A DNA stretch of 64,000 nucleotides from the IMG/VR virus record IMGVR_UViG_3300031787_000001, positions 222,786 through 286,785 of that record. One strand, given 5' to 3'. A model generated the notes under the pieces. That model was not told the DNA's origin. It saw only the letters and a program-made list of their open reading frames with translations, and searched no databases. Shown here one piece after another: positions 1,024-52,555 of the stretch; positions within the stretch are counted from its first letter, which is position 1; each line of letters starts with the position of its first letter. Position numbers and translations under genes: made by a program.

Positions 1024-4000
1024 TTAATTAAATCTTAAATTTGCTCCGATTACACTTGTTGAACCTCCGGCAAATCTTTCCATTATTATTTCAAATTTTA
1101 TATAATAAACGGGTTGACCCAAATAATTTTTAGGTACATTAACAACAACATCAGAATATTGAAGTGCATAATTTGTACTTGTTTGTGATAAGTACGTCGC
1201 TGGTGCAATTGTATTATATGGAAACTCACCGGCAGTACTTGCAAGTACCGTTCTAACACCGACATTATTTTGAACACCACCAAATTGTTCATGTGTTGTT
1301 ACTCTAAATGAATAAACATAATCTGTTGCCGTTGTGGTATGTGGTAATTTTAATGCAGTTTCTAAATCAAAAGCAACGAACATACCCCTATCAAGTAGTC
1401 CAAAATTTTGTACTCCAGTTCCACCAAAAACTTCATAATTAGGTATACCGTTAAAACCTAATTTAAAACTAACTGGAAGTGTTGATGCGAATTGAGGTAG
1501 TGTACTAGAAGCGAGAACACCATCATTGTTTATTGTAACAACTTTATTGTTTGTATCACCACTTTGTAACCCCTCAATTCTTACTGGATTTTCTGAACCA
1601 ACAATATGTAATTTATTTGTTGGTGATCTTGTTCCAATACCAATACCACCTTTACCTTCTGATAGTTGTATACTAATACCTGATGTTGATGATCCAAAAT
1701 TTATGTCACCCTCGTTTAAGGGATTAATATTTAATGGTGAACAAGAATGTATATTTGAAACATATAAATCATTAACACAATCTCCGGATATACCTATTTG
1801 ATTTACATTAATTGTATTTGCAGTTAAACCACTTAAAACTAAATAATCACCGATTGTGGTAGTACCACCTCCACCACCTCCTATTGTTGCCGGTTGTACC
1901 CATTGTGATGAATTTCCGTCATTTATCCACACATATTCAATACCATTGTTTGTGTTATACCATCTATCACCATTAACTAAAACATAACCCGTTGGTGTTG
2001 ATCCCGAAATAAAATATCTCGATGCGTTTACTAATGTGTTTCCAGTGTTACCTGTTATATCTAAATAAATTCTAAATCCACCTCCAGTATTATACCCTAA
2101 ATAAAGTATATTATATCTATTATCAAAACTACCACCAGAAATCCATTTATCATTTGTTAACCCACTATATGGTGAATAATGTAGAACACCGTTAGAGTCT
2201 ACCGTAACTATATTGTTGTCATTTGATAATTGTAGACCTTGAATTCTAACAGGATCGGTAGAACCTGTAATATGTAATAAATTTGTTGGGGATTCCGTAC
2301 CAATACCAACATTGGTACCGTCATATGTGAATCCTGTACTGCCCGATAATATACCATTATTATTGTATATTACTTGTTTATTAGAACCGACACCATAAAA
2401 TGTTTGACCACTTATAGTTGTTGCGGTGATTCCACTTTGGAATAATACGTCGTCAGTAACCGTTCCACCACTTAATGGTAAGTAGTTTCCTGATATTGTT
2501 ATATCACTTAAATTTTTATATTTTATAATACCATTATTGTCGGATGTTAATATTCTGGTTTCCGTTGTTCCACTTTGTAATCCAACGAATCTAACAGGAT
2601 CGATTGTATCTTCAACATGTAATCTGTTTAAAGGTGTTACGACACCTATACCTATTTTTCCTGTTGTTGTAGGTGAATCACTAGGACTTCCACCAGAAGT
2701 ATCAAAATTAGTATTGATACCAAATAATACACCACCAATATTAATAGAATCCGTGGTTCCATTTGGTAATGTGATAGAATTACCAATAATGATATTATTT
2801 TTTCCTATTTTACTAAACCCAAATCTAGGTGTTCCTACATTAAAACCTATTAATGTTGAATACGATGCGTTGGTTGAATCTTTACCTGCCAAATAACCAA
2901 TAAAATTTGAAAATCTAGCGTAATTAGCATTTGAACCCGCGTTAGTACCTATAAAAGTTGAACCTGACGCATACAATGCACCACTACCCGCTAAATTACC
3001 TATAAAATTTGAATCAAAACCTCTGATTTGTCTATCAAATCCAACAATTGTTTCACCGTTGATATTATATCCCGCATTATACCCTATAAAATTTGAAAAT
3101 CCTGCGTTTTTTGAATTTTGTCCCGCACCAATACCAATAAAATTTGAATTGTTTGAATTTTTTGAATCTGAACCGGCACTTTGTCCAATAAAATTACTTA
3201 GATCACTATCATTAGCCCTAATACCTGATCCATACCCTATAAATGTTGATCTACTTGCACCTGTTGTTTCTCTACCCGCAAAATCACCAAACGAAATTTG
3301 GTCAAAACTTAAAGACTGGGCATTAGGTCCTAATGCAAATGAACCTTGACCAGTACTACCAGTAATGACATATGGTTTCTCGTATGGATAAACTGTAGGT
3401 ATAACATCACTTTCGGCATACCATTTTGGGATACCTTGTAAATTTCTTCCGTCACCATAAAATGTTTGACCACTTATAGTTGTTGCGGATATTGTATTTA
3501 CCTCTAAGTAATTTAAATTAGTGTTTCCACTAACACTTAAATCACCGTTAATAGTTAATCCTGTTAGTTCATTAATAAGTACACTAAACGTAGATCCTGA
3601 ATTATCAAATATTGTAAATTTATTTGAATTGTTATATGTGAATCCAGTCACATATGTGTCACCTGTCACAGAAGATATAATATCCGATAATGATCTATAT
3701 TGAATGGTGTTACCAGTACTTAAACTTAATATTTTTGTGTCAGATGTACTTAAATTAACCGTATCTAATTGAACAGTATTTGAAAATCTACTTGTACCAT
3801 TAACATCAAATTGAAATGTGCCGGGTAAAACATTAACGCCCACTTTACCATTAAATCTCAACAAATCATTTGCGAAATCACCATATATCAATGGTGTTGA
3901 TGAAGTGGTATTTTCAATGTAAAGTAAATTTGATCCCGTTTCGTTTCTACCCGCATTAAGACCAATAAAAACATTATTACTACCAGTTATATTATTAAAA

Positions 4001-5232
4001 CCAGCATTTTTTCCGACAATTGTGTTACCATCTCCAGAAGTCGCATTTTGTCTTGTGTTGGTTCCGATATATACGTTGTTTCTACCTGTAAGTTGATTCA
4101 ATGCTGAACCATTTCCTATAAAAACATTGTCATCACCAAACGTCCCTGTTGTTGCACCAGTAAAATTAATTGCAACAGTATCACCAATTATACTATTAAA
4201 ACTACCTCTAATGAGTTTTGTTAAAGAATTATTACCAAAAACTGTATTTTTAACACCACTAGTGATTCCCGTCATTGAGGTGTTACCAACAACTAAGTTA
4301 GTTCTAACGTTAGATGTTGAAATTCTACCAGCATTTTTACCGATAAATAAATTTGCAAATTCTAATTCCGCGGGATTAGTTATAGATGATCTTATTTCAA
4401 ATAATATATTTCCCGACTCGTCTAATCCATTTAAAAATCTATCATTAATATTAGAAGTTCTTCTTAACGATAACGTATTTCCACTTAAATCAACAATCCT
4501 ATTTGACAATAGATAACCATCGACAGTATATATATTATCTATATTTGTTAAGTTAGATCCGTCACCATATAATGTTCCACCACTTATCGTTGTTGCCGAT
4601 ATTATATTAGAAAATAAAGTATTGAGATTTGTGTCTCCACTAACACTTAAATCACCATTAATGGTCAATCCTGTTAAATCGTTTATTGTAATAACAAACG
4701 AAGAATTGTTATTATCATTAATTGTAAGTGTATTATTTCCATAGGTGACTCCCGTAACAAAAATATTTGGGTCTATTGGAAGATTTTGATAAGTAGTCGC
4801 ACTTATTGTCGTTGCAATAAACCCGCCATTTAATGTGGTGTTACCCGTTATATTTAAATCACCATTAAGATCTAAATCACCATTAATTGTTAATCCTGTT
4901 AGTATGTTAAAAGATGCGGTTAATGTGTATCCCGACCTGTCGACTATTGTAAAAGTATTGTCACTATATGTAAATCCTGTGGTATAACGATCAAAATCGT
5001 ATTCAAAACCACTAACAGTTATCGTGTTACCACTATTGCTAGTTAGTGTTAAGACACCTTGACTAAATGATCCACTATTAAGATACAAATCACTTATTGG
5101 TGTACCTGACAAATATATATTCTCAGAATATATTGCATCTATAGGTCCATCAATTTTACCTATTTGAACCGTGTACCCCGAAGGTACGGTTATGGAGTCA
5201 ATTTGTGACCAATTTATCTTTTGTAATCCCAT
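1024..5232 (-). CDS. Large tail-fibre/adhesin-like virion protein
   Basis: 1402 aa, Gly/Ser/Thr/Asn-rich. Three TG(F/V)TY..N...I...LTGLTINGDL repeats, many FIG..AG beta-helix-type repeats, three GIG...P.N.LH...PVR..GLQ repeats. Confidence 0.8.
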   Translation of the reverse strand: MGLQKINWSQIDSITVPSGYTVQIGKIDGPIDAIYSENIYLSGTPISDLYLNSGSFSQGVLTLTSNSGNTITVSGFEYDFDRYTTGFTYSDNTFTIVDRSGYTLTASFNILTGLTINGDLDLNGDLNITGNTTLNGGFIATTISATTYQNLPIDPNIFVTGVTYGNNTLTINDNNNSSFVITINDLTGLTINGDLSVSGDTNLNTLFSNIISATTISGGTLYGDGSNLTNIDNIYTVDGYLLSNRIVDLSGNTLSLRRTSNINDRFLNGLDESGNILFEIRSSITNPAELEFANLFIGKNAGRISTSNVRTNLVVGNTSMTGITSGVKNTVFGNNSLTKLIRGSFNSIIGDTVAINFTGATTGTFGDDNVFIGNGSALNQLTGRNNVYIGTNTRQNATSGDGNTIVGKNAGFNNITGSNNVFIGLNAGRNETGSNLLYIENTTSSTPLIYGDFANDLLRFNGKVGVNVLPGTFQFDVNGTSRFSNTVQLDTVNLSTSDTKILSLSTGNTIQYRSLSDIISSVTGDTYVTGFTYNNSNKFTIFDNSGSTFSVLINELTGLTINGDLSVSGNTNLNYLEVNTISATTISGQTFYGDGRNLQGIPKWYAESDVIPTVYPYEKPYVITGSTGQGSFALGPNAQSLSFDQISFGDFAGRETTGASRSTFIGYGSGIRANDSDLSNFIGQSAGSDSKNSNNSNFIGIGAGQNSKNAGFSNFIGYNAGYNINGETIVGFDRQIRGFDSNFIGNLAGSGALYASGSTFIGTNAGSNANYARFSNFIGYLAGKDSTNASYSTLIGFNVGTPRFGFSKIGKNNIIIGNSITLPNGTTDSINIGGVLFGINTNFDTSGGSPSDSPTTTGKIGIGVVTPLNRLHVEDTIDPVRFVGLQSGTTETRILTSDNNGIIKYKNLSDITISGNYLPLSGGTVTDDVLFQSGITATTISGQTFYGVGSNKQVIYNNNGILSGSTGFTYDGTNVGIGTESPTNLLHITGSTDPVRIQGLQLSNDNNIVTVDSNGVLHYSPYSGLTNDKWISGGSFDNRYNILYLGYNTGGGFRIYLDITGNTGNTLVNASRYFISGSTPTGYVLVNGDRWYNTNNGIEYVWINDGNSSQWVQPATIGGGGGGTTTIGDYLVLSGLTANTINVNQIGISGDCVNDLYVSNIHSCSPLNINPLNEGDINFGSSTSGISIQLSEGKGGIGIGTRSPTNKLHIVGSENPVRIEGLQSGDTNNKVVTINNDGVLASSTLPQFASTLPVSFKLGFNGIPNYEVFGGTGVQNFGLLDRGMFVAFDLETALKLPHTTTATDYVYSFRVTTHEQFGGVQNNVGVRTVLASTAGEFPYNTIAPATYLSQTSTNYALQYSDVVVNVPKNYLGQPVYYIKFEIIMERFAGGSTSVIGANLRFN

Positions 5233-5280
5233 ATTAAAAGTAAAGTCTTTATATAAATACTTTTATATGGTTTAATTAAT

Positions 5281-5310
5281 AAAAAAAGGAGGTTAAACCT
5301 CCTTTTTTTT
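5281..5310. terminator. Intrinsic terminator, probably bidirectional
   Basis: aaaaaaaggagg-ttaaa-cctcctttttttt, directly downstream of the glutaredoxin gene. Confidence 0.8.
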
Positions 5311-5313
5311 ATT

Positions 5314-5891: not shown

Positions 5892-5893
5892 AA

Positions 5894-6967: not shown

Positions 6968-6971
6968 ACTA

Positions 6972-6979
6972 CAAATGTA
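6972..6979 (-). promoter_or_regulatory. Bacteroidota-type -7 promoter box (TAnnTTTG)
   Basis: TACATTTG just upstream of the AAA gene. Same pattern at 18792-18799 (TAATTTTG, clpP) and 21184-21191 (TATTTTTG, sbcC). Confidence 0.5.
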
Positions 6980-7003
6980 ATAAAATTAATGAATAAAAAA
7001 AAA

Positions 7004-7830: not shown

Positions 7831-7847
7831 ACTATATAAATATTTAG

Positions 7848-10335: not shown

Positions 10336-10341
10336 ATGTTC

Positions 10342-30773: not shown

Positions 30774-30785
30774 ATATAATTATTT

Positions 30786-31748: not shown

Positions 31749-31766
31749 ATCATATTTTTTATTTTA

Positions 31767-32714
31767 TTAACAAGTACCTCCACTGTAATTAATATTACAT
31801 GGTATACCTGTTGTATATATTTGTAAATCAGAAAATGAGAATAATGTTGTTGGCCAAGTTTTACTACATACCAATGTCTCTGATGGTGATCCAAAAGTAC
31901 CTGATGGTATAACAACATCTTGAGATGTGTCATCACAACAATCTGTTATTGTAACAATTTTTGTTGATCCTGCGTTATATATCCTGAAAGATCTACATTC
32001 ACTTGAACAATCAAAAGTGGGTATTGATGGTTGTGAATTATAAATAATCTGTGCACTTCCAGTAAGATCATAAACTCTATTATTACTTACCCATCTACCA
32101 ATTGATTGTGTTGATGTGACATAATTCGTACATAAACACAATGGATAAAATAAAGCATCACAAGGATTACTTGGGTCTCCACAAAGAACAAGTGGATTTG
32201 AATAATTCACTGGTATACCTAAAGATGATGAATTTATTAATAGTTGTTGATTATTAGATATGGCCCCTGATGGTATACATACGTTACCCTCAATAAAAAC
32301 GGCATTATTTAACCATGGTAACCCATTCCCTGTACCTAAAGATGCGGTATTAGAAAGAAGTAACCCAACTTGACCACATTCAAATGATGATGGACAATTA
32401 ACAGATGGTACAACCGGTGGTGGTGGTGTTATTGTTGGTGTACTAGTAGGTGTCGGTGTTGCCGTAGGTGTTGGTGTACTGGTGGGGGTTGGTGTTGATG
32501 TTGGTACAGGTAAATTATTGGGTATTTCTAATGTACATTGTTTTTCAATACTAGAAAAATATATAACATACGTACCAAACACATAATTACTAATATATGT
32601 GTACGGTAATACTTGTGATCCTAAATTAAAAGTACCGCCAGTATCGGGGAAAAAAGTTATTTCTCCTGTTTCCCCCTCATAATTTTGTGTTTTTATTATT
32701 ATTTCTTGTATCAT
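31767..32714 (-). CDS. Modular virion protein with Pro-Thr linker
   Basis: N-domain NY.G....ITF.PDTGGTFNLGS.V.PY shared with the 779-aa gene. Confidence 0.7.
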   Translation of the reverse strand: MIQEIIIKTQNYEGETGEITFFPDTGGTFNLGSQVLPYTYISNYVFGTYVIYFSSIEKQCTLEIPNNLPVPTSTPTPTSTPTPTATPTPTSTPTITPPPPVVPSVNCPSSFECGQVGLLLSNTASLGTGNGLPWLNNAVFIEGNVCIPSGAISNNQQLLINSSSLGIPVNYSNPLVLCGDPSNPCDALFYPLCLCTNYVTSTQSIGRWVSNNRVYDLTGSAQIIYNSQPSIPTFDCSSECRSFRIYNAGSTKIVTITDCCDDTSQDVVIPSGTFGSPSETLVCSKTWPTTLFSFSDLQIYTTGIPCNINYSGGTC

Positions 32715-42098: not shown

Positions 42099-43018
42099 TA
42101 TATATTTGTAATAGTATCAAAATCTAATGATTGGTCAATATCTGTTTTTCTTTCTCTAACCTCATACAATGTGTCATTTAGATCATCTTTAATCTCATAC
42201 AAGTTGTATTGTCTATAGATATTGTTATTATTATCGTAAATCGTATAGATACCCGGTGCAACCGCCTTAGTTTGATTACCATAAAGTGCGTGTGCTAATG
42301 TAGTTGCATCATGTTCAACCATCTCGATTTCAATTGTAGTTGGATTTAAAAAAGTATTTGTTAAAATAATTTTTTGTGATGGTTGTCCAATAAAAGGTAC
42401 CGTATTTGGTTTACTGGATGGTGCGGAGGACGGTGTAACAGTAAGAAACATTAAATTTGTCGCTTGATCAGTGTACTGATATCTTATCGCTTTTTGAGTT
42501 GTATTTGTCAAATTTGATGCAATTGGTGTACAATAAAATGATGAAGTTACGACTCTATAAAAATTTGGTATTTTAGTATTGTTATTTGTGTTGATATACT
42601 CTATTCTATACCCAACCAATCCTTGTGGTGTGAATTTATTTCTATCTTCGGTTGGAACGTTACTTATATCAATAATTAATCCTCTAACTGAAGGTAAAGA
42701 AGCCAAAATACCACAATCGGTTATTGTTGTTCTTATTTGTTTGGGTCTAATGTGTAAGGTATATATACCTAATTCGGAAAAATCACTAGAGGATAATTTT
42801 AAATTATATAAACCACCTAATATTTCAACATTTGGTGCATTATTGTCATCGGTTGTTTCATTATTATGAAAAACCGGTGTTAAAATGTCCTGAGAGGCTA
42901 ATTTTTTTAATGTAACCTCAGATGTTGTCAATCGATTTGCAACATAATGATAATATATATCAACATCTTGTGGTGATATATCCGATGGTCTAACTATACC
43001 GTATGATCCTACTGCCAT
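42098..43018 (-). CDS. Conserved-looking structural protein (baseplate block)
   Basis: 306 aa, translationally coupled to the 2329-aa gene; TATTTAT motif upstream. Confidence 0.65.
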   Translation of the reverse strand: MAVGSYGIVRPSDISPQDVDIYYHYVANRLTTSEVTLKKLASQDILTPVFHNNETTDDNNAPNVEILGGLYNLKLSSSDFSELGIYTLHIRPKQIRTTITDCGILASLPSVRGLIIDISNVPTEDRNKFTPQGLVGYRIEYINTNNNTKIPNFYRVVTSSFYCTPIASNLTNTTQKAIRYQYTDQATNLMFLTVTPSSAPSSKPNTVPFIGQPSQKIILTNTFLNPTTIEIEMVEHDATTLAHALYGNQTKAVAPGIYTIYDNNNNIYRQYNLYEIKDDLNDTLYEVRERKTDIDQSLDFDTITNI

Positions 43019-43044: not shown

Positions 43045-43968
43045 TTATTGTTTTATTACATTAAAAAATCCATTTCCATAAATTCTTAATTCACCGGTAT
43101 TGTCTACTTCAGTTAATCTTAGATTATATTCCATAACACTAAGTTTACCTCTTTCAACAAAAATATCGGAATAGATCGTCGGTTCATCAATAAACCCAAG
43201 AAAATGTTCATTCCTTGTTATTAGATTATCGAAAACTTCTTCTTTTGTGAATCCAACGGTCGTACCCGTTATCATCGTATAACCATCAGAATAATCTTTA
43301 TAAACTAAATTGTCAATAGTATATGCACTATAACTACCGATTTCATCGACCCCGCCCGTTACCCCAGTATATGAATTTGACCCATATAACCTTTTTTCAT
43401 CTATTCTACTTCCACCTATAGCAACATACTTAAATGTTGTTTGTCCAGTGTTATTTGTGTAATCTAAATCATTTAGATAATCTTGATCACCCGTTAAAAC
43501 GGTATAAGGTATAGTAAATCCACTAAAAGTACCAAGTGGATTTGGTTTTGATATGTCTTGAGGTATTTTAACTATTTTACTTAAGTTTTGTTTTGTCCAT
43601 GGACTATCTAAACTTATCGTTATGGTGTATGAACTATATCCAATAGATGGTATTGGGTAAGTTTTTGAAACGGTAGACAGTAAATTACCTGTATGTATAG
43701 GTAATGGAGAAGACGTACCATCTCCCCAATTTATAGTGAAAGTGGCTTCTTTTATATATCTAAATTTTTCAATGAATACGGTATTATATACATCAATTAC
43801 ATTAACATTTTGTGTGTAACTAAAATTACAAAATTCTTCTATTTGACTTATTTTACCATCAAAACCGACCATGATACCCATTTCATCAACCGATGAATCT
43901 AAATATATAGGTAGGTTATATGTTAACCCCGTATTTGTCCTTAATATTTCGTATTTAGTTTTTCTCAT
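43045..43968 (-). CDS. Structural protein with PKD-like segment
   Basis: FTINWGDGT motif; located in the structural operon. Confidence 0.65.
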   Translation of the reverse strand: MRKTKYEILRTNTGLTYNLPIYLDSSVDEMGIMVGFDGKISQIEEFCNFSYTQNVNVIDVYNTVFIEKFRYIKEATFTINWGDGTSSPLPIHTGNLLSTVSKTYPIPSIGYSSYTITISLDSPWTKQNLSKIVKIPQDISKPNPLGTFSGFTIPYTVLTGDQDYLNDLDYTNNTGQTTFKYVAIGGSRIDEKRLYGSNSYTGVTGGVDEIGSYSAYTIDNLVYKDYSDGYTMITGTTVGFTKEEVFDNLITRNEHFLGFIDEPTIYSDIFVERGKLSVMEYNLRLTEVDNTGELRIYGNGFFNVIKQ

Positions 43969-44790
43969 CTATGAAAATGATTGATAAAATTTAATTGGGT
44001 TATACCTGGTACCGACTCTAGCACCGGTAGATCCACTATAACTATAAACAATATATGAATAATCAGTTCTTCCAGGTGTGTCTGTTCTATTTATTTCCAA
44101 TTTATAATACATGTCTCTAGATTCGACTATTTCAGTTGTTGGTGTTAATCCACTATTTGTTAGATTTAATATTTCACCATCCTTTGCGTTATAAAATCTG
44201 GCAGACACCCAAAAAGTATTTCCGGTTATTAATGTTTCTTCGAATGCGCTATCATCTTTAAACCAAAAAAGATACATGTTTTCTTTATTCCTATAATTTG
44301 ATCCCGAAAAAACAGGAACAAATATGTTTTTTATTAGTGGTGCAAAAAAGTATCTTTCACCTAATGGTAATGTTAGATTTTTTGTAAAAACTAATTTTCT
44401 GTTACTTCTATCTGGCACATCGTTATTGGGTGTTTTGTAAAATTCTAATCTAAAAAAACTTTCAGTTGCTACTTTTAATAATTTAGCGTTTTCATCTGGT
44501 TGTATACCAACTAAATTATAATCTAATCCATTTGTATAGGTTGTTCCTGTTGTAAAATAAAAATAAAACCAAATGTCATTTTGTGTAAAATTAGTAACTC
44601 CACTTATTGGATATTCTTCATGTATATATCTAACAGTTTCATAATTATCTATTGGGTTTATAATTCTTTTTAAACTTTCTTTTTCTAATTCTTCGGCGTT
44701 CTCTTGCCACCCGAGATCTGTTTTGAAATCGTTTTCGTTATTTATTAAGATATTTTTATCACTATCGTTTCTTAATATATTCATTAACAA
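43969..44790 (-). CDS. Structural protein
   Basis: 273 aa in the baseplate operon. Confidence 0.65.
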   Translation of the reverse strand: MLMNILRNDSDKNILINNENDFKTDLGWQENAEELEKESLKRIINPIDNYETVRYIHEEYPISGVTNFTQNDIWFYFYFTTGTTYTNGLDYNLVGIQPDENAKLLKVATESFFRLEFYKTPNNDVPDRSNRKLVFTKNLTLPLGERYFFAPLIKNIFVPVFSGSNYRNKENMYLFWFKDDSAFEETLITGNTFWVSARFYNAKDGEILNLTNSGLTPTTEIVESRDMYYKLEINRTDTPGRTDYSYIVYSYSGSTGARVGTRYNPIKFYQSFS

Positions 44791-46532
44791 TCTATTTTTA
44801 GATTTTGTGTCTTTTTAACACCATCTTGTTTATTTGTATAGTCTTCCTCATTTTTTAAATAGAAATTAATATCAAATTTTAAATAATGACAATCATTTAA
44901 AAACGGAAAATTAGTTCCAAATCCATCAACATCGACATATCCGTGATCATATAGATCTCTCCATTTCCATAAATTTTCTGATTTGTCATATATTATATTT
45001 TCAGGTAATCCATAAATTTGGTCGGTATTTGATGTTTCTATATATGGTGATAATTGTCTAATTTTTACTCTATAGTGTGGTTGATAATATAACCCAACCA
45101 AATTAGTCGGTACCGCATCCATAGCGGTATCTTGTCCATGATCAAAAATATTCAAAGGTGATGTTATTTTATGGAAAGATTCGCTTATTATCCTTTCTTT
45201 TAATTCTTTTGTATTGTATTCAACAAATGCTCCCACTAAATCTGTACCTTTTGGTATTGGGTTACCTCTATTAAATGTTATACCTGAATTAATAAATGGT
45301 GTACTTGTTAAACTATTTTCAAAAGGTGAATTTGAATCATCAAAATGTTTATCTACCCAAGTATCGTGAAAATTAAATTTGTAACCGACTTTTGGTGGAT
45401 AATTAAAATATCCGTTATCGTTTCTAAAGATTATTGATACATATAATTCTGTTGGTGTGTAACCTAAATTATTTGTTATCCCACTTAATGTGTATGGTTC
45501 TTTAAAATCAAAAAGTACTGATTCCATTCTATTTTGTTCAACCAAATAGTCAATAACACCTTGGCTATTTTCAAATAATAATTTTTTTTCATCTTCAAAT
45601 ACTGGCGATTCAAACCCCATTTTATCTAAGATGTAATCTTTTAATTCAGTTAATGTTTTGTGTCTATGAACATAGTACTTTGAAGTTGTTTCAGATATAT
45701 TATTTATATCGAGACATCTCTTTATAAAGATAACGGTATCAAGCGTTAATGATGGTGGAAATTGACTTTTTAGAATGTTTAAAACATAATTTTCAGAATC
45801 ATATATTTCGTCACCAATACTATCAACATAAAAAGTTCTATTTTCTACCGGTACCGTATTATTTAATGTTGTTTCTAAAATTGTTATATATTCTCCTTGA
45901 TTTATACCATGTGTAACTGGTGACGTAAATTTATAATATTTACCATTATTAGTAACTCTAAATGGGATACCATCTTGTGCTTGAAAAGAGTAAACTGTAC
46001 CATCAGATAAACTGTAATTTATTGGATACGTTGTGTCTCCACTATAAACATATGATAAATAAAAATTCCAATTTTTATAAGGTGCGTCAGTTTGGGACAT
46101 ACCAATATGATCAAGTCCACCATCTGTCAAAGTGATATTAGGGACGAATGCACCAGGTGTTGATCCTGATATTGGTTCATTTTTTTCTCTTAAAAGATCT
46201 GTTCTTAAAAAGGCAAATTCATTATAGTTTAGATATCCTGTAAAATCACCATCCCCACCATCACCGACTAGTGCCAAATTTCTTTCAAGTGGACCATATG
46301 TTGTGTCACCAGAATAGGTATTTCTGAATATCATTTTTATTTTACCAAATATTTTATAATTTTGACATTCGTTTCTTTCTTCATTAAAAAGTCTAGCCAA
46401 ATCTAAAATAACATCTCTGTCACCTTCTCTTAATAAATTTTTAGATTCATCTAAATTTATTCTAATTGTTAGATTTTCATCGGGTGCACTTTCAAATCTT
46501 CTATCTGGTAATATGATTTTTTTCTTATTCAT
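44784..46532 (-). CDS. Structural protein
   Basis: 582 aa in the baseplate operon. Confidence 0.65.
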   Translation of the reverse strand: MNKKKIILPDRRFESAPDENLTIRINLDESKNLLREGDRDVILDLARLFNEERNECQNYKIFGKIKMIFRNTYSGDTTYGPLERNLALVGDGGDGDFTGYLNYNEFAFLRTDLLREKNEPISGSTPGAFVPNITLTDGGLDHIGMSQTDAPYKNWNFYLSYVYSGDTTYPINYSLSDGTVYSFQAQDGIPFRVTNNGKYYKFTSPVTHGINQGEYITILETTLNNTVPVENRTFYVDSIGDEIYDSENYVLNILKSQFPPSLTLDTVIFIKRCLDINNISETTSKYYVHRHKTLTELKDYILDKMGFESPVFEDEKKLLFENSQGVIDYLVEQNRMESVLFDFKEPYTLSGITNNLGYTPTELYVSIIFRNDNGYFNYPPKVGYKFNFHDTWVDKHFDDSNSPFENSLTSTPFINSGITFNRGNPIPKGTDLVGAFVEYNTKELKERIISESFHKITSPLNIFDHGQDTAMDAVPTNLVGLYYQPHYRVKIRQLSPYIETSNTDQIYGLPENIIYDKSENLWKWRDLYDHGYVDVDGFGTNFPFLNDCHYLKFDINFYLKNEEDYTNKQDGVKKTQNLKIDC

Positions 46533-47240
46533 TTATCTTTGTATATTAAATAAATAATTCATAACACATCTTATTGATGATGATGGTTGTTTTTTTATTT
46601 CACAAATTCCATTTTCAATCATTATTTTATTATATTCATAGGCCATTCCACAAGTTTCCCAACTCATTTCCTCACCATCAGTTCTTCGGTATATGTTCAT
46701 CATTTCCACTTCATCATTAAAAATACCATTCTTACTTGGTTTCATATTATCTATTGTTTTTTTACTAAACCCATTTTCTTTACATTTACAAACAACGGCT
46801 TTACCATTTAAACTGTAAGCACCATACATTGAGGCTGTTTTTATACCACCATACTTTTCAGAAACCTCAACCAATTTTCTATGTGCCATTCCAGCGAAAC
46901 ATGTTGCAAATTGCAATGTACCATTTGTATCTAATAGACTAACCAATTCATTTAATAATAAATTTAATTTTTCATCACCATCAATTTCTTTTAACTCTTT
47001 TGAGTTTATTAAATGTTTACCTCTACCATATGTATTAATGGTAACGTACTTCAATTTATTTGGATACTTTTGTTTAAATTTTTTTATATTTTCAATAACT
47101 TCGTTTACTGTTTTAACCGGACCAATTGAATAAGTGAATTTGGAAAATGTTCTAAATAAAAGTTTATCTTTTTTATCATAATCCAGATAAACAACAACAT
47201 GATTTGGTCTTCTTTTACTAAATAAATCTTTTATAAACAT
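46533..47240 (-). CDS. Tandem paralog B, DUF4347/caspase-fold-like
   Basis: YVTINTYGRG...LQFATCFAG; starts MFIKDLFSKRRPNH. Confidence 0.6.
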   Translation of the reverse strand: MFIKDLFSKRRPNHVVVYLDYDKKDKLLFRTFSKFTYSIGPVKTVNEVIENIKKFKQKYPNKLKYVTINTYGRGKHLINSKELKEIDGDEKLNLLLNELVSLLDTNGTLQFATCFAGMAHRKLVEVSEKYGGIKTASMYGAYSLNGKAVVCKCKENGFSKKTIDNMKPSKNGIFNDEVEMMNIYRRTDGEEMSWETCGMAYEYNKIMIENGICEIKKQPSSSIRCVMNYLFNIQR

Positions 47241-47956
47241 ATTATTGTGTATTAAAAAAATAATTCATTAATCCATGAATCGCTAACCATGGTTGTGTAA
47301 TATTTTCACAAATTCCATCTTCGATAGTTCTTTTATTATATTCATAAGCCATACCACAACTTTCCCAATTTATCACTTCATTATCTGTTCTTCTGTTTAT
47401 TTCGATCATTGTTTGTTCGTCTCGTTCCATACCTCTTTGACTTTGTGGTAATTTAGATATTAAATTTTGACTATAATTTTTATCTTTACATGAACACATT
47501 TTCCCATGTTTAAATAATCTAAATAAAGAAGTAAAATAATTAGCAATCGTGTCTGGTGCAACTATTTTAATTCCATCTAATTTTTGTGACATTTCAACTA
47601 ATTTCCTATTTATTGTTCCAACAAAACAAGTACCGAATAACATTGATCCGTTTTCCTTTAACATTGGTTTTAATTGTAACAATAATTCAAAAACTTTATC
47701 GTCACCTTCTTTTGTGTGTACTAAATGTTTACCTTTACCATTTGTCATTATGATTATGTAATCTAATTTATTTGTATATTTTTTTTTAAAAATATTTAGA
47801 TCGTGTATCACATCATCAATTTTCCGATATGGACCAATGGAATGTAAAAATTTAGAAAAAATTGTAAATAATCCATTATCTGTTTTATTGTTATCAATAA
47901 AAATTATCAAATGGTTTGGTCTTCTTTTACTAAATAAATCTTTTATAAACATATTA
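47203..47956. repeat. Perfect 42-bp direct repeat (47203-47244 and 47915-47956)
   Basis: tttggtcttcttttactaaataaatcttttataaacatatta occurs at both positions. Confidence 0.95.
47242..47952 (-). CDS. Tandem paralog A, DUF4347/caspase-fold-like
   Basis: YIIIMTNGKG...MLFGTCFVG; likely start 47952 (MFIKDLFSKRRPNH). Confidence 0.6.
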   Translation of the reverse strand: MFIKDLFSKRRPNHLIIFIDNNKTDNGLFTIFSKFLHSIGPYRKIDDVIHDLNIFKKKYTNKLDYIIIMTNGKGKHLVHTKEGDDKVFELLLQLKPMLKENGSMLFGTCFVGTINRKLVEMSQKLDGIKIVAPDTIANYFTSLFRLFKHGKMCSCKDKNYSQNLISKLPQSQRGMERDEQTMIEINRRTDNEVINWESCGMAYEYNKRTIEDGICENITQPWLAIHGLMNYFFNTQ

Positions 47957-50900
47957 GAAAGGTCCGTAAAATTCAATAAATTTATCAAAGGCGGTCTTAC
48001 CTTTTCTTAATCCAAAATAATAATGAAATGGTATACCAATTTCCATAGTATGTCTTTTGACACCATTCACAGTATGTTCTTTATAATTGTCATTATATTT
48101 CTTTTCACCACTACCAGCATCAATACAATCTCTTATTGGTGGTAAAACATAGGGATCAAAATAATCATCATCCAACGGATTTGCGTTTGGATCAGGATTC
48201 ATATTACCCTTCATTAATTGTATTTTTTGGTTATATATTTTACCACTATAATAACTTTGTCCTTCATCACTACCTATATTACCAGTTGTTGATTCTCCGA
48301 AACCATGTCCTATAGTATCCCACATATAATATGGAACTCTTTGGGATACGTCACCAAGCCTTGTTGGTTCATTTAAACATTTTCTAATTAGTTCACCTGC
48401 TCTTTCAAATGTAACCGTATCGGGATCATCTTCACTAAATACAAAATCAAGACCGACTGGACCTTTACCATCAAATACCGTACTGTATTGTGCTGTGTAT
48501 GGTGAAAATGATTCTTCATATTCAAATGGAAAAATTCCCGATTGTGTATTAAAATTCATTAATTGGGCGATATCACCATCTATTAGTCCGTTTGCTCTTG
48601 CATCAAATAAATCTTGTACATCTAATTTTCCCCTTTCTTTTATTTCTTTAGATTGAACAATATATTCCATTAAATCATCTAATCCTTTATATGATGTTGC
48701 ACCTATACTTCTAGATATCGAACAATTAACATCTAACTCAGGATCGGTACATATTTCATTAATCCAAGTGTTTCTTGGTCCTAAATCAATAATTGTTGTT
48801 GGGAAATTTATTTCTCTTTTGTAATTTAACCCATTAAACAAATCACCAATTAAATTCATAAAAGGTAATGGAGTACTAAAATTTGCACCATAATCAATTG
48901 CCCTAACTTGACCATAAAATCCTTTTGTTTTGTTCGCATAATCACTCGTTAAAGAAGTATTTACACCTAATTGAGTTCCAGTTGCGGGATCGTAATCATA
49001 TTGTGTTTCTGATGCCGAATAACTCGGACTATATGGTGTAGATCTATAATAGAAATGGAGGCCCGTTGCGTCTTGAACTTTATACACACATTCTTTACAA
49101 AATCTATTACTTCCTCTTTTCATAAATTGAAAGAAATATAGTGACCCTAATAACCACGAATCATTAAATGTATATGATACCACCCCTCCACACATTAGCT
49201 TATGGAATAATTTTCTTCTTCTAAAAGATTTTAACATTGTAAATGTGTTTCCTGCTAATGGTACTATACTATAAACACCATCTCTAAATTCAGAATATCC
49301 TGATAATGTACCTCTTTGTGTTAATCCTTGATCACAATAATATGGTCCCTTTTTCTTTACTTCGCCAGCATATGCACCATTCACAATACATCTTGTTGTG
49401 GCATTTCTAAATCCTCCATTCGGATCTGTTGGCCATTTGGCATAAATACTTGCAACAGCACCAACATTACATGGTACACCACTAAAGCATGGATCGGGAT
49501 GTGATTGTAAAATATTTGTTGAATAATTTCCATCCAATTGATCCCATAAACTAGTTCCGGCACCAATAGAACCATTACTAATACAACCAACATTATATGT
49601 ACTTGAATTTGTTGGGTAACAATCACCTGGTCTACAACCCATTAAAACATTTCTCGCGGCGGCATATTCTTGTAGTGGTGTTCCGCCATTATATAACGGG
49701 AAAACAAATGCCTGTAAATTCATACTACCACCACCACCATCTTCTGTCCATTTTGTGTCAATTATAAAATCGTACTTATTACAACCTTCTTCCTCAATTC
49801 CTGATGGTAGATTTGGGTCCGGTGCTGATACGTCAGAACAATCTTCCACATATATAAGTTTAGATATAGGAAAAACACAACCATGATCTTCATGTACAGA
49901 ATTTTGAATAGGTGTATCATATCTTGTGTTAGTTTCATCGGCAAGAAAACTAGCCAAAACACTATATACCCCTCCACCTACTTTCCATCTACCATATTGT
50001 CCAGAATATATTATGGGGTAATTGGTTCCACATCCAATAAAAATATATTGTGGGTCTGTACCAATAAGTGGTGTAATTTCCAATAGATATTTTCTATTCA
50101 TAATGGCACCATCAACAGTTGACCCTGTATAATTTGAAAATACGTCAATTCCCGTACCACCACATCTATTACAATATGCCGATGTTGATGATGTGGTATA
50201 AGTTACACCAGTAAATTGTGGTGGAATTGTAAATGATTGTCCTCTTTTAGCACAAAAAACAAATGTGTTACCAGATGTTCCTGTTGGAACTGTTATAGTA
50301 TTTCCTGACGCATTATTACAATCAACAAAATTATTTATTGTAAAAGCACTTAAACCTATATTTTTAAAAGTATATGCATCACAAGGATATGTGAAATATA
50401 AAGAATCATCAGCGTTGCCGGAACAATAAGCACCGGGACTTTGTTGTGTAGCCGTTACTTGTGAACCAAAACCTGGCGGTATTGTAATGGTTTGACCTTT
50501 TTTTGCACATACTTCAATTCCATTAGACGGATTTTCTTCAACAGGAAGATATATCGTTCTACTGACATCATCGCAATCTATATATGTTAAAGTACATGCA
50601 CTTGAACTATAATTTCTAAATACATACTTTCTACATATGTCGGTATTTCTTCTAATCTCATATTTTTCTTCTACAGTGAAATTTGTGGCAACAGGTGGTT
50701 TATTTTTATAATCATCGGCCGTCGGTGCCACTGGTGGAGTTTGTACAGGTGTTTCTTCATTATCTTCATTACAATCGTAACAATCAGGATACACCAATAA
50801 CTGAAGTCTAAAAATATTTGTAAATTGAAATTCCTTACCCCTTCTAAATGTTCTAGCAGCAGCATCGTTTGACACCCCACTACTTGCTATTGCTTCCGCA

Positions 50901-52555
50901 ATACCAAAAAGAGCGGCCGTCACAAATTCTTTTATAAATAAAGAAATCACGTTACCGATATATTCAATAAAATTTAATACCGTTAAAATGAAAAATTGAA
51001 ATCTATGATTTCTAACCGCATCGTTTACAGGAAAATAATTATTAACATTTTCACAATCATCTTTTTCTTGTGGCCAGTTTTCTTTAATACCAATAAAAGA
51101 TTCTCTTCTATCCTTTTTAAAAAAACTAAATGCCCTTTCTAATGCACTTGTTTTATAATATTTGTTTATAAATTCACTAACGGTGTATATTCTACCGTAT
51201 CTAAATTGGTAAAAATAGTCTTGTGGAACCCCGTAGTTATCACTAGTAATTGCGTCCACACTTGTTCCGGCAATTTCTTTTCTTGCGTCAGGAGGATAAT
51301 CATCAATATTAGTACTAAATGAATATGATCTACTATCAATTGTTGTTGGTGATCCTTGAAAACTTGTATCACCTATATGATATTCCCTAACATTTGGTAC
51401 TAAGAATTTACCCGTAAATCTATTTCTAGCACCAGTATCTTCAGTCAATGAAAAACGAAATCTATAATTACCTTGTGTGGCAATACCGATATTCTTGTCA
51501 TTTGTTTCATAATATTCACCAAACTCATTTGTGGCAATATATTTCATATTCATTGGTATTCTAAAAAAGAATACACCATTCTCATCTATTGTACTATCTA
51601 TATCAAAAAATTCAAGTATTGGTCTGTCTATATTTGGTGATCCGTCAGGATTTTTCTCATAATTTCCAGTAAATCTAATTGATTCGACATCACCTTTGAA
51701 TGTTATCAATCTACATTTTTCACCCATTTGGTTGTCAACGTTACAGTTCACCCTTAACGCATCTTTACCTGAATCGGTAAAACTACCTCCCGCAATTATT
51801 GCATACGGGTCAATTCTTACTCCTTGAGAAGATAAATCAAAATCAACTCTAGTGATTGCAATTTGACATAACTCTTGGTTGCCCCAAAAAGGATAAACCT
51901 CAATAGATTTATCATAACTAACAATTTGTGGTAAAGAATCAATATCCGACGCACTTTTATATGTGTATTTATTTACGAATTTTTCTTCAGATATACCATC
52001 GTAAATAAAATCATATGGTACTAATGATTGACATCCCGCATCAGACATATCTAGGTCAATATGTAATGTTTGGTTACCTAATGGTACCCCCCATATCATA
52101 AAATCACCCGCTTCATTTGTTTTTACGGTGTACCTATAATATTTTTCAAAAACCTCTAAAACTTCCTCTCTATTTAAGATGTCAGATTGATCAGGAAATG
52201 TACCTGTTGGTACGTGTCCTGTATGTTGTTTTCTAGCCGGTAATAGGTTATATCTATAATTTGAATCGTTTCTTTGATCTATTGATCTATAAGGATACAA
52301 CTCAGATAAAACAGGATCATTTTCATCAACATCTGATATTGGTACAAAAATAGAAACTCTGGCATTTGGGAGACCAAAACCATTATTAACCGATATTCTA
52401 CCAACAACAACACCATAATCACCACAAAATGATGAGTAAGCCTCTTGTTGTGAAAATTTTAAAGATAGTATTTCTAGTAAATCGTAGTCTTGTTTTAATT
52501 CTACGGTTATTTTTTGATCTACACCTATGTCTGTATAAATTCTATGTTTTTGCAT
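47954..52555 (-). CDS. Large baseplate-associated structural protein
   Basis: 1533 aa after gp6. N-terminal Ig/carboxypeptidase-regulatory-like segment (GRISVNNGFGLPNARVSIF, KTNEAGDFMIWGVPLG) and Cys-rich repeats. Confidence 0.7.
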   Translation of the reverse strand: MQKHRIYTDIGVDQKITVELKQDYDLLEILSLKFSQQEAYSSFCGDYGVVVGRISVNNGFGLPNARVSIFVPISDVDENDPVLSELYPYRSIDQRNDSNYRYNLLPARKQHTGHVPTGTFPDQSDILNREEVLEVFEKYYRYTVKTNEAGDFMIWGVPLGNQTLHIDLDMSDAGCQSLVPYDFIYDGISEEKFVNKYTYKSASDIDSLPQIVSYDKSIEVYPFWGNQELCQIAITRVDFDLSSQGVRIDPYAIIAGGSFTDSGKDALRVNCNVDNQMGEKCRLITFKGDVESIRFTGNYEKNPDGSPNIDRPILEFFDIDSTIDENGVFFFRIPMNMKYIATNEFGEYYETNDKNIGIATQGNYRFRFSLTEDTGARNRFTGKFLVPNVREYHIGDTSFQGSPTTIDSRSYSFSTNIDDYPPDARKEIAGTSVDAITSDNYGVPQDYFYQFRYGRIYTVSEFINKYYKTSALERAFSFFKKDRRESFIGIKENWPQEKDDCENVNNYFPVNDAVRNHRFQFFILTVLNFIEYIGNVISLFIKEFVTAALFGIAEAIASSGVSNDAAARTFRRGKEFQFTNIFRLQLLVYPDCYDCNEDNEETPVQTPPVAPTADDYKNKPPVATNFTVEEKYEIRRNTDICRKYVFRNYSSSACTLTYIDCDDVSRTIYLPVEENPSNGIEVCAKKGQTITIPPGFGSQVTATQQSPGAYCSGNADDSLYFTYPCDAYTFKNIGLSAFTINNFVDCNNASGNTITVPTGTSGNTFVFCAKRGQSFTIPPQFTGVTYTTSSTSAYCNRCGGTGIDVFSNYTGSTVDGAIMNRKYLLEITPLIGTDPQYIFIGCGTNYPIIYSGQYGRWKVGGGVYSVLASFLADETNTRYDTPIQNSVHEDHGCVFPISKLIYVEDCSDVSAPDPNLPSGIEEEGCNKYDFIIDTKWTEDGGGGSMNLQAFVFPLYNGGTPLQEYAAARNVLMGCRPGDCYPTNSSTYNVGCISNGSIGAGTSLWDQLDGNYSTNILQSHPDPCFSGVPCNVGAVASIYAKWPTDPNGGFRNATTRCIVNGAYAGEVKKKGPYYCDQGLTQRGTLSGYSEFRDGVYSIVPLAGNTFTMLKSFRRRKLFHKLMCGGVVSYTFNDSWLLGSLYFFQFMKRGSNRFCKECVYKVQDATGLHFYYRSTPYSPSYSASETQYDYDPATGTQLGVNTSLTSDYANKTKGFYGQVRAIDYGANFSTPLPFMNLIGDLFNGLNYKREINFPTTIIDLGPRNTWINEICTDPELDVNCSISRSIGATSYKGLDDLMEYIVQSKEIKERGKLDVQDLFDARANGLIDGDIAQLMNFNTQSGIFPFEYEESFSPYTAQYSTVFDGKGPVGLDFVFSEDDPDTVTFERAGELIRKCLNEPTRLGDVSQRVPYYMWDTIGHGFGESTTGNIGSDEGQSYYSGKIYNQKIQLMKGNMNPDPNANPLDDDYFDPYVLPPIRDCIDAGSGEKKYNDNYKEHTVNGVKRHTMEIGIPFHYYFGLRKGKTAFDKFIEFYGPF

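What the first reader, a model, noticed from the sequence alone, without database searches (positions are those of the whole stretch)
1024..52555. [S/T]-G-x-T motif saturates outer virion proteins but is absent from enzymes and core baseplate: candidate virion-wide modification (glycosylation) sequon
Seen, by manual count: about 35 [ST]GxT sites in the 1402-aa fibre; 5 each in the 273-aa (SGVT, TGTT, TGNT, SGLT, SGST), 307-aa and 582-aa proteins; many more in the 701-, 695-, 779-, 2329- and 1533-aa proteins. I found none in gp6 (610 aa), the 306-aa structural protein, NrdJ (759 aa) or SbcC (779 aa). The motif sits in non-homologous contexts, so it is not one repeated domain. Established: some phages glycosylate their virions, and the Bacteroidota host O-glycosylation sequon is D-[ST]-[AILVMT], which differs from this motif. 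Inference: the motif is a recognition sequon for a phage-encoded modifying enzyme (e.g. a glycosyltransferase) that coats exposed tail/baseplate surfaces, with the Pro-Thr linkers as further acceptors.
Basis: partly seen in the sequence, partly recalled or inferred. Interest (0 to 1): 0.85.

Follow-up and report, generated by a model that had tools for sequence, protein, structure and literature searches.

The report
Ser/Thr-Gly-x-Thr turns on tail proteins
The outer tail and baseplate proteins of an uncultured 287-kb freshwater phage really are saturated with a four-residue motif, [S/T]-G-x-T, that sits at exposed beta-turns; it is most likely a structural hairpin signature peculiar to this phage group, but a sugar-attachment site cannot be excluded because the phage carries a cluster of glycosyltransferase genes next to its fibre genes.

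Summary
The outer proteins hold 97 [ST]GxT sites against about 17 expected; the enzymes hold 2 against 3. No composition, local-composition or Markov null explains this, and the motif is directional and hydroxyl-specific: [ND]GxT, [ST]Gx[VI] and the reversed motif are not enriched. The extended form is hydrophobic-[ST]-G-x-T-hydrophobic. In a confident AlphaFold model of the 273-aa protein, all five sites have [ST]-G in a loop at a strand boundary, and two are tight hairpin tips.

The motif is clade-specific. Every one of 50 related contigs examined shows it; T4, a 484-kb relative and other fibre proteins do not.

The window holds no glycosyltransferase. However, 6-15 kb beyond its start, just downstream of the fibre genes, lies a glycan island with at least six glycosyltransferase-like genes, methyltransferases and DegT/FdtA. 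The island's gene content varies between lineages, apart from one conserved virus-specific GT-A enzyme.

That enzyme co-occurs with motif-rich fibres. But the baseplate proteins are equally motif-rich in lineages where it was not detected.

- Structural hairpin signature: about 0.45.
- Glycosylation sequon: about 0.3.

The parts
1024..5232 (-). 1402-aa tail fibre carrying 35 [ST]GxT sites
   Evidence: 35 observed against 4.4 in shuffles (z = 15) and 4.7 in local shuffles. Coupling odds ratio 18.4. Site spacing is often 11-19 residues, and many sites lie in recurring fibre sequence blocks.
25847..27952 (-). 701-aa outer protein, 6 sites
   Evidence: 6 against 0.8, p = 0.0005. No Pfam or PHROG family.
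27980..30067 (-). 695-aa outer protein with a Pro-Thr linker, 6 sites
   Evidence: 6 against 1.7, p = 0.0055. The linker matches phrog_15511. It shares a repeat of about 100 aa with the 2329-aa protein.
30108..32714 (-). Three small outer proteins (221, 320 and 315 aa), 2 sites each
   Evidence: 2 against 0.17, 0.39 and 0.70; at most weakly significant individually.
32744..35083 (-). 779-aa outer protein, 5 sites, not individually significant
   Evidence: 5 against 2.5, p = 0.10. Its N-terminal 61 aa are shared with the 315-aa protein.
35109..42098 (-). 2329-aa protein, 20 sites
   Evidence: 20 against 2.8, z = 10.5. 15 of the 20 sites are kept in the 72%-identical relative, which also has 6 gains.
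43045..43968 (-). 307-aa conserved baseplate-periphery protein with a PKD-like segment, 5 sites
   Evidence: 5 against 0.57. The family has 1006 homologues carrying 3-14 sites each. Sites at residues 149, 174 and 234 are nearly invariant and many others are patchy. The AlphaFold model is poor, pLDDT 57.5.
43969..44790 (-). 273-aa conserved baseplate-periphery protein, 5 sites mapped on a confident model
   Evidence: 5 against 0.20, z = 11. AlphaFold pLDDT 83.8, pTM 0.76. S63-G64 and S252-G253-S254 are loops of beta-hairpins. T192 and T255 are first strand residues. Sites 81 and 213 lie in coil after a strand: site 213 directly after it, site 81 three residues after it.
44784..46532 (-). 582-aa baseplate-periphery protein, 5 sites
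   Evidence: 5 against 0.38, z = 7.8. Orthologues in other lineages carry 9-16 sites.
47954..52555 (-). 1533-aa protein following gp6; its 4 sites are confined to residues 750-813
   Evidence: 4 against 1.3, p = 0.04. The sites cluster in a variable stretch, where the relative L008 gains further sites at residues 650 and 737.
42098..43018 (-). 306-aa conserved structural protein without the motif (negative case)
   Evidence: 0 sites in the window and 0-2 in twelve lineages.
52613..54445 (-). gp6-like baseplate wedge protein without the motif (negative case)
   Evidence: phrog_219 and phrog_6, baseplate wedge subunit. 0 sites in the window and 0 in the eleven lineages where the orthologue was recovered.
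46533..47988 (-). Paralogous pair of 235 and 248 aa without the motif (negative case)
   Evidence: 47% identical to each other; 0 sites each.

Best explanation
Φ-[ST]-G-x-T-Φ (Φ = hydrophobic residue) is a structural signature of tight beta-turns and hairpins. The peripheral tail proteins of this phage clade use it to an unusual degree.

In this reading, Ser or Thr caps the turn and Gly takes the positive-phi position. The following Thr is the exposed first residue of the returning strand. The flanking hydrophobic residues face the core. The same sequence pattern is the first hairpin of ubiquitin, L-T-G-K-T-I (own knowledge).

Shown here:
- The enrichment and its specificity.
- The location of sites at strand boundaries.
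- Conservation across the clade.

Inferred:
- The backbone geometry.
- That no modification is involved.

Why this clade prefers S/T over N/D at the first position is not explained.
For: - Flank preference: 64% hydrophobic residues just before the motif and 53% just after, against a 36% background. The full Φ[ST]GxTΦ form occurs 26 times against 1.7 expected.
- AlphaFold model of the 273-aa protein (pLDDT 83.8): [ST]-G is in a loop at all 5 sites. Two sites are complete hairpin loops. The final T lies in the following strand at 3 of 5 sites, as its first residue at two.
- Family-level sites in the confident part of the 307-aa model fall on a hairpin loop (residues 54-57) and on strand starts.
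- In the family alignments Gly is nearly invariant, position 1 swaps freely between S and T, and x varies freely.
- In a 50%-identical relative the same places hold other turn formers such as N-G, G-P and G-G.
- Baseplate-module orthologues (582, 273, 307, 2329 and 1533 aa) are enriched 5-25 fold in all twelve lineages examined. This holds whether or not the conserved island glycosyltransferase is detected. gp6 and 306-aa orthologues stay at 0-2.
- Codon use at the sites is diverse, so the constraint acts on the protein.
Against: - A generic hairpin motif should also appear in other beta-rich phage proteins, but the coupling odds ratio is 1.16 in T4 gp6-12/wac/gp34-37 and 0.96 in LR756508.
- Composition-matched fibre proteins of other phages in the same waters, and LamG-type receptor-binding proteins of a sister lineage, are not enriched.
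- [ND]GxT (6 against 11.9) and [ST]Gx[VI] (20 against 21.4) are not enriched, although N/D and V/I should serve a turn and a strand start at least as well.
- Sites turn over quickly: 13 gains in a 72%-identical relative, many of them in rewritten stretches.
- Sites saturate replacement fibre genes whose homology to the originals was not checked.
- A glycosyltransferase island lies next to the fibre genes.
- Only one model of good confidence was available, and no coordinates could be inspected.
Confidence: 0.45

Rival explanations
1. The motif is a sequon. A phage-encoded cytoplasmic glycosyltransferase recognises the hairpin tip [ST]-G-x-T on folded or folding virion proteins and attaches a first sugar to one of the hydroxyl residues. 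Lineage-specific glycosyltransferases and methyltransferases of the island next to the fibre genes then extend it. The result is a glycan coat on exposed tail surfaces.
For: - The coupling is strong and clade-specific: odds ratio 8.8 in the window and 4.6-16 in 46 of the 50 related loci, against about 1 in T4 and LR756508.
- Both ends of the motif require a hydroxyl residue.
- Sites are gained and lost as viral glycosylation sites are.
- Sites lie at turns at strand boundaries; side-chain exposure itself could not be inspected.
- The enzymes are not enriched.
- The island lies 6-15 kb beyond the window start. It holds a 257-aa GT-A enzyme, a TOD1-like GT, a 221-aa GT, a GT8-like protein, GT2, GT2_5+GT2, two or three methyltransferases, and DegT plus FdtA.
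- Islands at the same position but with other GT families occur in three further lineages, one with GT7-LamG fusions.
- The 257-aa protein is the only glycosyltransferase shared by three of the four islands; none was found in the part of the fourth that was read. It has a GT-A fold in the ESM Atlas (TM 0.79-0.81 to clusters in which some (23%) or all members carry GT2 or GT17) and an invariant D-x-D.
- In the fibre locus, the three lineages with this enzyme have about 2.1 sites per 100 aa and odds ratios of 7.9-12.2. The 22 lineages without it have at most 0.83 per 100 aa and odds ratios of 0.3-1.4. The label needs two changes on the tree.
- Precedent for a virus-specific four-residue sequon with Thr at +3: NTXT in the chlorovirus PBCV-1 capsid protein (PMC9614988).
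Against: - There is no direct evidence of modification.
- Baseplate-module proteins are as rich or richer in the motif in lineages where the 257-aa enzyme was not found, even with a more sensitive scan. That enzyme therefore cannot account for the clade-wide sites.
- Two fibre proteins in lineages without the enzyme are still enriched, z = 6.6-6.8.
- The fibre genes and the island are neighbours, so they may move together. Co-variation of fibre type and island is also expected if the island modifies the host receptor glycan.
- Virus glycosyltransferase clusters can also modify DNA (Pyle et al. 2024, as cited in PMC12619734).
- No known sequon has this form.
Confidence: 0.3
2. The motif is kept by some other clade-specific partner that is neither a sugar transferase nor plain fold stability. 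Examples are a shared assembly chaperone that docks on these hairpins, another modification of the hydroxyl pair, or a repeated contact surface for host polysaccharide.
For: - The clade specificity, the hydroxyl specificity and the restriction to peripheral proteins call for a clade-specific agent.
- The baseplate sites are independent of the conserved island enzyme.
Against: No candidate gene or known precedent was found. No tool result points specifically to this reading.
Confidence: 0.12
3. The enrichment is an artefact of composition, low-complexity segments, internal repeats or a DNA-level word.
For: - The fibre contains recurring sequence blocks.
- The 2329-aa protein has three copies of a W-N-S-G-T-T-x-W-E domain.
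- Ser at position 1 prefers the codon AGT, 0.60 against 0.31 overall.
Against: - Global and local shuffles and the Markov expectation all fail by 2.4-6 fold.
- Without the fibre the odds ratio is still 6.7.
- Small non-repetitive proteins of 273, 307 and 582 aa are the most enriched.
- Almost no paralogy is found between the proteins.
- Codons at all positions are diverse.
- The reversed and permuted motifs are at expectation.
Confidence: 0.02

Closest known systems
Tight beta-hairpin with a type I turn and glycine (G1) bulge, as in ubiquitin residues 8-13, L-T-G-K-T-I (own knowledge)
   Same: - The sequence pattern is the same: hydrophobic-[ST]-G-x-T-hydrophobic.
- [ST]-G lies in the loop and the final T lies in the returning strand at 3 of the 5 sites of the 273-aa model.
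   Different: - In this clade N/D cannot replace S/T, and V/I cannot replace T.
- The motif is over-used 5-25 fold in one phage clade only.
- The backbone geometry was not checked.
Virus-encoded protein glycosylation of chlorovirus PBCV-1 capsid protein Vp54 (sequon NTXT; PMC9614988)
   Same: - The virus carries its own glycosyltransferases and methyltransferases.
- The sequon is non-canonical, four residues long, with Thr three places after the acceptor.
- The target is a virion surface protein.
   Different: - In PBCV-1 the linkage is N-linked to Asn in a eukaryotic virus and is proven chemically.
- Here the acceptor would be Ser or Thr in a phage, and nothing is proven.
Mycobacteriophage virion glycosylation (Freeman et al. 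2023, as cited in PMC12619734)
   Same: Phage-encoded glycosyltransferases that decorate virion proteins.
   Different: - In mycobacteriophages the glycans sit at the C-termini of the capsid and tail-tube subunits.
- Here the sites are dispersed through tail-periphery and fibre proteins.
Bacteroidota general O-glycosylation, sequon D-[ST]-[AILVMT]
   Same: The probable host phylum: a relative was binned in a Flavobacteriaceae MAG, and the nearest cultured relatives are Flavobacterium phages.
   Different: - That sequon is at expectation in these proteins, 42 against 41.4.
- The host system acts outside the cytoplasm (own knowledge).
'Moraphages', large freshwater phages with predicted Flavobacteriia hosts (PMC12619734)
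   Same: - Genome size of 200-307 kb, freshwater origin and Bacteroidota host signal.
- Shared gene kinds: sigma factor, glutaredoxin, gp25 and a prohead protease.
- Four glycosyltransferase groups among the core orthologous groups the authors examined.

Membership tests
Beta-hairpin with type I turn and G1 bulge | Strand - short loop ending in Gly - strand, with the residue before Gly in the loop | tested here: met
   In the 273-aa model (pLDDT 83.8), [ST]-G is loop at 5 of 5 sites. Sites 63-66 and 252-255 are complete hairpins. The final T is in a strand at 3 of 5 sites.
Beta-hairpin with type I turn and G1 bulge | Gly in a left-handed (positive phi) conformation, with Ser/Thr side-chain capping of the turn | not testable with these tools
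   The tools returned only a DSSP string, not coordinates.
Beta-hairpin with type I turn and G1 bulge | Asn or Asp accepted at the capping position as readily as Ser or Thr | tested here: not met
   [ND]GxT occurs 6 times against 11.9 expected, while [ST]GxT occurs 97 times against 16.5.
Virus-encoded virion glycosylation (chlorovirus or mycobacteriophage type) | The virus encodes its own glycosyltransferases and sugar-modifying enzymes | tested here: met
   An island just outside the window holds at least six GT-like genes, methyltransferases, and DegT plus FdtA. Islands occur in three other lineages.
Virus-encoded virion glycosylation (chlorovirus or mycobacteriophage type) | Glycan chemically attached to virion proteins at the proposed sites | not testable with these tools
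   This needs mass spectrometry or glycan staining of virions or co-expressed proteins.
Virus-encoded virion glycosylation (chlorovirus or mycobacteriophage type) | Motif density follows the presence of the transferase across relatives | tested here: inconclusive
   The fibre locus follows the 257-aa GT-A enzyme: 3 of 3 lineages with it against 0 of 22 without, in pooled measures. The baseplate-module proteins do not follow it.
Bacteroidota O-glycosylation sequon D-[ST]-[AILVMT] | Enrichment of the sequon in the target proteins | tested here: not met
   42 observed against 41.4 in shuffles.
N-x-[ST] N-glycosylation sequon | Enrichment of the sequon in the target proteins | tested here: not met
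   134 observed against 148.8 in shuffles.
Single repeated domain or beta-solenoid repeat | Motif-bearing segments are homologous to one another | tested here: not met
   All-against-all BLASTP finds only three local similarities among 17 proteins. Pfam and PHROGs find no shared family. Within the fibre and the 2329-aa protein, some sites do lie in repeats.

The most novel reading that the evidence does not exclude
A large group of uncultured aquatic jumbo phages O-glycosylates the exposed hairpin tips of its tail and fibre proteins at a defined sequon, [ST]-G-x-T. The enzymes would be phage-encoded cytoplasmic glycosyltransferases. A conserved core enzyme would start the glycan, and a hypervariable island next to the fibre genes would diversify it, much as O-antigen loci do.
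Probability: 0.3. Interest if true: 0.85.

Novelty: new variant of a known kind. Interest (0 to 1): 0.58.

Why it matters
Few phages are known to glycosylate their virions, and no phage sequon has been defined. If these sites are sugar acceptors, hundreds of abundant freshwater and marine phages would carry a predictable glycan coat. Its chemistry would be set by a variable gene island. That would bear on host recognition, virion survival and grazing, and would give a portable tag for glyco-engineering.

If the sites are purely structural, the case is still instructive. It would be a very strong, lineage-specific preference for one hairpin sequence across unrelated proteins, which ordinary fold constraints do not explain. 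It would also be a warning for sequon hunting from sequence alone.

Tried and rejected
- **Composition, local composition and Markov nulls:** rejected as explanations.
- **DNA-level word:** rejected, because codons at the sites are diverse.
- **One repeated domain:** rejected by BLAST, Pfam and PHROGs.
- **Avoidance of deamidation-prone Asn-Gly:** not supported. The NG dipeptide is at 0.88 of expectation in outer proteins and 0.82 in enzymes.
- **A different motif in other clades:** none found. The top words elsewhere are linkers or known fibre repeats.
- **Solved structures:** no sequence relative for the 273- or 307-aa families, the fibre, or three island proteins. The casein kinase hits to the 307-aa profile are spurious.
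- **Fold search with the 273-aa model:** no match below E = 0.05.
- **307-aa model:** too poor to use beyond two segments.
- **GenBank phages:** they hold neither the 307-aa protein nor the island GT2.
- **Cross-matching families by longest-contig length:** failed, because the cluster records are incomplete.
- **TSP3-peptidase neighbours as motif-free orthologues of the fibre proteins:** rejected. The homology is only local, so they serve as unrelated controls.
- **Thymidylate-synthase-like gene near the island as a base hydroxymethylase:** it matches ordinary thymidylate synthase, phrog_160.
- **One look-up failed** because the ORF start differed from the called gene.

Full report
**What the window is.** It is part of a 286,785-bp viral contig (100% identity). 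GC content is 29% and nearly all genes lie on the - strand. A gp6-like wedge protein is followed by a long run of large proteins with no Pfam or PHROG family. The nearest GenBank phages share only 26-28% identity in gp6: Flavobacterium phages, a Microcystis phage and a 484-kb uncultured phage. The 307-aa protein has no match there at all. By contrast, public metagenomes hold 1006 and 616 homologues of the 307- and 273-aa proteins, on contigs up to 354 kb. One 248-kb relative is binned in a Flavobacteriaceae MAG. Size, habitat and gene kinds resemble the recently described 'moraphages'. Membership was not tested.

**The observation.**
- Pooled, the outer proteins hold 97 [ST]GxT sites in 10,246 aa against 16.5 expected (z = 20.4). 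The remaining proteins hold 2 in 8,741 aa against 3.0.
- Shuffling within blocks of 10-30 residues leaves the expectation at 16.5-18.3.
- The expectation from the [ST]G and GxT frequencies is 40.
- Among all gapped triplets, SGxT (50 against 7.5) and TGxT (47 against 9.0) rank directly after the Pro-Thr linker words.
- The motif is directional and specific. [ST]GxS occurs 20 times against 13.5, [ST]Gx[VI] 20 against 21.4, and [ND]GxT 6 against 11.9. Reversed and permuted forms occur 12-28 times.
- Of the Gly residues preceded by S/T, 44% are followed by x-T, against 8% of the others. The odds ratio is 8.8, p = 1e-28, and 6.7 without the fibre.
- Codons at the sites are diverse. The only bias is toward AGT for Ser, one mutation away from ACT for Thr, so the constraint acts on the protein.
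- BLAST finds almost no paralogy between the proteins.

**Context and structure.** The residue before the motif is hydrophobic in 64% of sites and the residue after it in 53%, against a 36% background. The full form hydrophobic-[ST]-G-x-T-hydrophobic occurs 26 times against 1.7 expected.

The 273-aa protein gave a confident model (pLDDT 83.8, pTM 0.76).
- S63-G64 is the two-residue loop of a hairpin.
- S252-G253-S254 is a three-residue hairpin loop, and T255 opens the next strand.
- T192 opens a strand after T189-G190-N191.
- Sites 81 and 213 lie in coil after a strand: site 213 directly after it, site 81 three residues after it.

The 307-aa model is poor (pLDDT 57.5). In its better parts, family-level sites fall on a hairpin loop and on strand starts. 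The pattern equals the first hairpin of ubiquitin, L-T-G-K-T-I (own knowledge). The sites are therefore turns at strand boundaries.

**Evolution within the clade.**
- In a relative with 70-80% identical orthologues, 31 of 39 sites keep the motif. Position 1 shows S/T swaps, x changes freely, and there are 13 new sites, many of them in rewritten stretches.
- In the 307-aa family, three sites are almost invariant and about fifteen more are patchy. Individual proteins carry 3-14 sites.
- Both small families stand at 10-11 times expectation.
- All 50 related baseplate loci examined are enriched, 2.1-10.4 fold.
- In a 50%-identical relative only 6 of 39 sites remain. The others hold N-G, G-G, G-P and similar turn formers. 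The fold does not require the full motif.

**Controls outside the clade.**

| Protein set | Coupling odds ratio |
|---|---|
| T4 gp6-12, wac, gp34-37 | 1.16 |
| LR756508 (484-kb uncultured phage) | 0.96 |
| Flavobacterium phage immuto | 2.4 |
| Window enzymes | 0.55 |

Fibre-like proteins of similar composition in other aquatic phages are at expectation. So are the LamG-type receptor-binding proteins of a sister lineage. No other clade shows an alternative dispersed motif. The host-type sequon D-[ST]-[AILVMT] and N-x-[ST] are at expectation.

**Glycosyltransferases.** None appears among the Pfam families reported for 44 further window ORFs. Only the first 25 of 35 matched families were listed. 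Walking off the window start, directly downstream of the fibre gene and on the same strand, the order is as follows:
1. Two more motif-rich proteins: 724 aa (14 against 3.1) and 411 aa (4 against 1.0).
2. A DUF1353 protein and a TSP3/zinc-peptidase-like protein.
3. An island containing a 257-aa protein, a TOD1/MUCI70-like GT, a 221-aa GT, a GT8-like protein, a GT2, two or three methyltransferases, DegT and FdtA (a 3-amino-3,6-dideoxyhexose route), and a two-domain GT2_5/GT2.

A strain variant replaces the fibre gene by three other genes, all motif-rich: 13 against 1.4, 8 against 0.9 and 14 against 2.0.

Three other lineages have islands at the same place with other families: GT7, GT10, GT11, GT25, HtrL, and GT7-LamG fusions. 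Among the island glycosyltransferases, only the 257-aa protein is shared by three of the four islands, at 52-62% identity; none was found in the part of the fourth that was read. It has no Pfam family. The ESM Atlas places it with GT-A glycosyltransferase models (TM 0.79-0.81), in a cluster of 1450 mostly viral members. It has an invariant D-x-D.

**Co-variation.** In the fibre locus downstream of the AAA ATPase orthologue, the results split by presence of the 257-aa enzyme.

| Lineages | Sites per 100 aa | Coupling odds ratio |
|---|---|---|
| 3 with the 257-aa enzyme | about 2.1 | 7.9-12.2 |
| 22 where it was not detected | 0-0.83 | 0.3-1.4 |

On the ATPase tree the label needs two changes, though a single origin is not excluded. 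Per protein the split is less clean. Many fibres in the other lineages are collagen-like (20-28% Gly), and two proteins there reach z = 6.6-6.8. Close orthologues of the enzyme in other contigs sit next to another motif-rich protein family, with 8-12 sites against about 0.9 expected. Distant homologues do not.

Against this, the baseplate-module orthologues (582, 273, 307, 2329 and 1533 aa) are enriched 5-25 fold in all twelve lineages checked. These include five lineages in which a more sensitive scan did not find the enzyme. The 582-aa orthologues there hold 9-16 sites, against 5-6 in the window lineage and its 72%-identical relative. The enzyme therefore cannot explain the clade-wide sites. 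Because fibre genes and island are neighbours, they may also travel together. Their co-variation could equally reflect an island that modifies the host receptor glycan.

**Judgement.** It is clade-wide across hundreds of uncultured phages and extends to replacement fibre genes.
- A purely structural hairpin signature explains the anatomy, the flanks, the conserved Gly and the independence of the baseplate sites from the island enzyme. It does not explain the clade restriction, the hydroxyl specificity or the turnover. I put it at about 0.45.
- The sequon reading explains those three points and gains real support from the island, the conserved GT-A enzyme and the fibre co-variation. It lacks any direct evidence and fails the baseplate test for the one candidate enzyme. 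I put it at about 0.3.
- Another clade-specific partner takes about 0.12.
- An artefact is excluded.

The chlorovirus NTXT sequon shows that a virus can evolve its own four-residue sequon with Thr at +3. That is a parallel, not evidence.

Noticed in passing
Outside the window: L021:6977-16137 (contig positions about 208-218 kb of the 286,785-bp record), downstream of window 1024-5232: A glycan island lies on the fibre-gene strand. It holds a 257-aa GT-A-like protein, a TOD1/MUCI70-like GT, a 221-aa GT, a GT8-like protein, GT2, SAM methyltransferases, a DegT aminotransferase, an FdtA isomerase and a GT2_5+GT2 protein. The GT8-like/GT2/DegT/FdtA core recurs in 56 viral contigs with GC content of 26-42%.
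   Followed up: yes
L018:6043-12432, compared with window 1024-5232: A strain-level variant replaces the 1402-aa fibre gene by three genes of 370, 294 and 663 aa, and the 724-aa gene by genes of 560 and 152 aa. The flanks are identical. This is a swappable receptor-binding cassette.
   Followed up: partly
L238:12173-15012: In a sister lineage two proteins fuse a GT7 glycosyltransferase domain to a LamG domain. The same domain builds the ten or more receptor-binding-like proteins encoded just upstream.
   Followed up: no
Loci L183, L186, L191, L192, L198, L212 (fibre loci of relatives): Many relatives carry collagen-like fibre proteins with 20-28% Gly, in which [ST]GxT is depleted, z down to -8.6.
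   Followed up: no
window 43045-43968: The 307-aa protein has a PKD-like signature (W-G-D-G ... H-T-Y ... Y-T-I) in the one well-modelled beta-sandwich segment, residues 45-145.
   Followed up: no
window 46533-47240 and 47242-47988: Adjacent paralogues of 235 and 248 aa are 47% identical to each other. The 235-aa one is only 44% identical to its orthologue in a relative whose neighbouring genes are 72-89% identical.
   Followed up: no
window 31767-32714 and 32744-35083: The 315- and 779-aa proteins share their first 61 residues at 52% identity and nothing else. This suggests a common attachment domain on different distal parts.
   Followed up: no
window 27980-30067 (residues 204-303) and 35109-42098 (residues 1430-1850): A domain of about 100 aa with the core V-V-W-N-S-G-T-T-R-W-E-N occurs three to four times in the 2329-aa protein and once in the 695-aa protein.
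   Followed up: no
window 27980-30067 and 32744-35083: Long Pro-Thr linkers give the strongest triplet signal in the outer proteins (PTxT 60 against 6.0). They match phrog_15511. A 50%-identical relative uses Pro-Ser linkers instead.
   Followed up: no
window, non-structural ORFs between 5314 and 25808 and between 54447 and 63444 (each family not mapped to its ORF): The replication and expression genes include a sigma-70-like factor, a NusG-like protein, a ClpP-type protease, a D12 adenine methyltransferase, a gp32-like protein, thioredoxin and two glutaredoxins. This gene set resembles that listed for 'moraphages'.
   Followed up: partly
L021:19136-20293: A thymidylate synthase of 385 aa is about 50-100 residues longer than usual, with an insertion relative to phrog_160.
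   Followed up: no
L234:11422-12861: In the 72%-identical relative, a 479-aa protein with a weak match to the Bacteroidota type IX secretion C-terminal sorting domain (Por_Secre_tail) lies between the peptidase-like gene and the glycan island.
   Followed up: no
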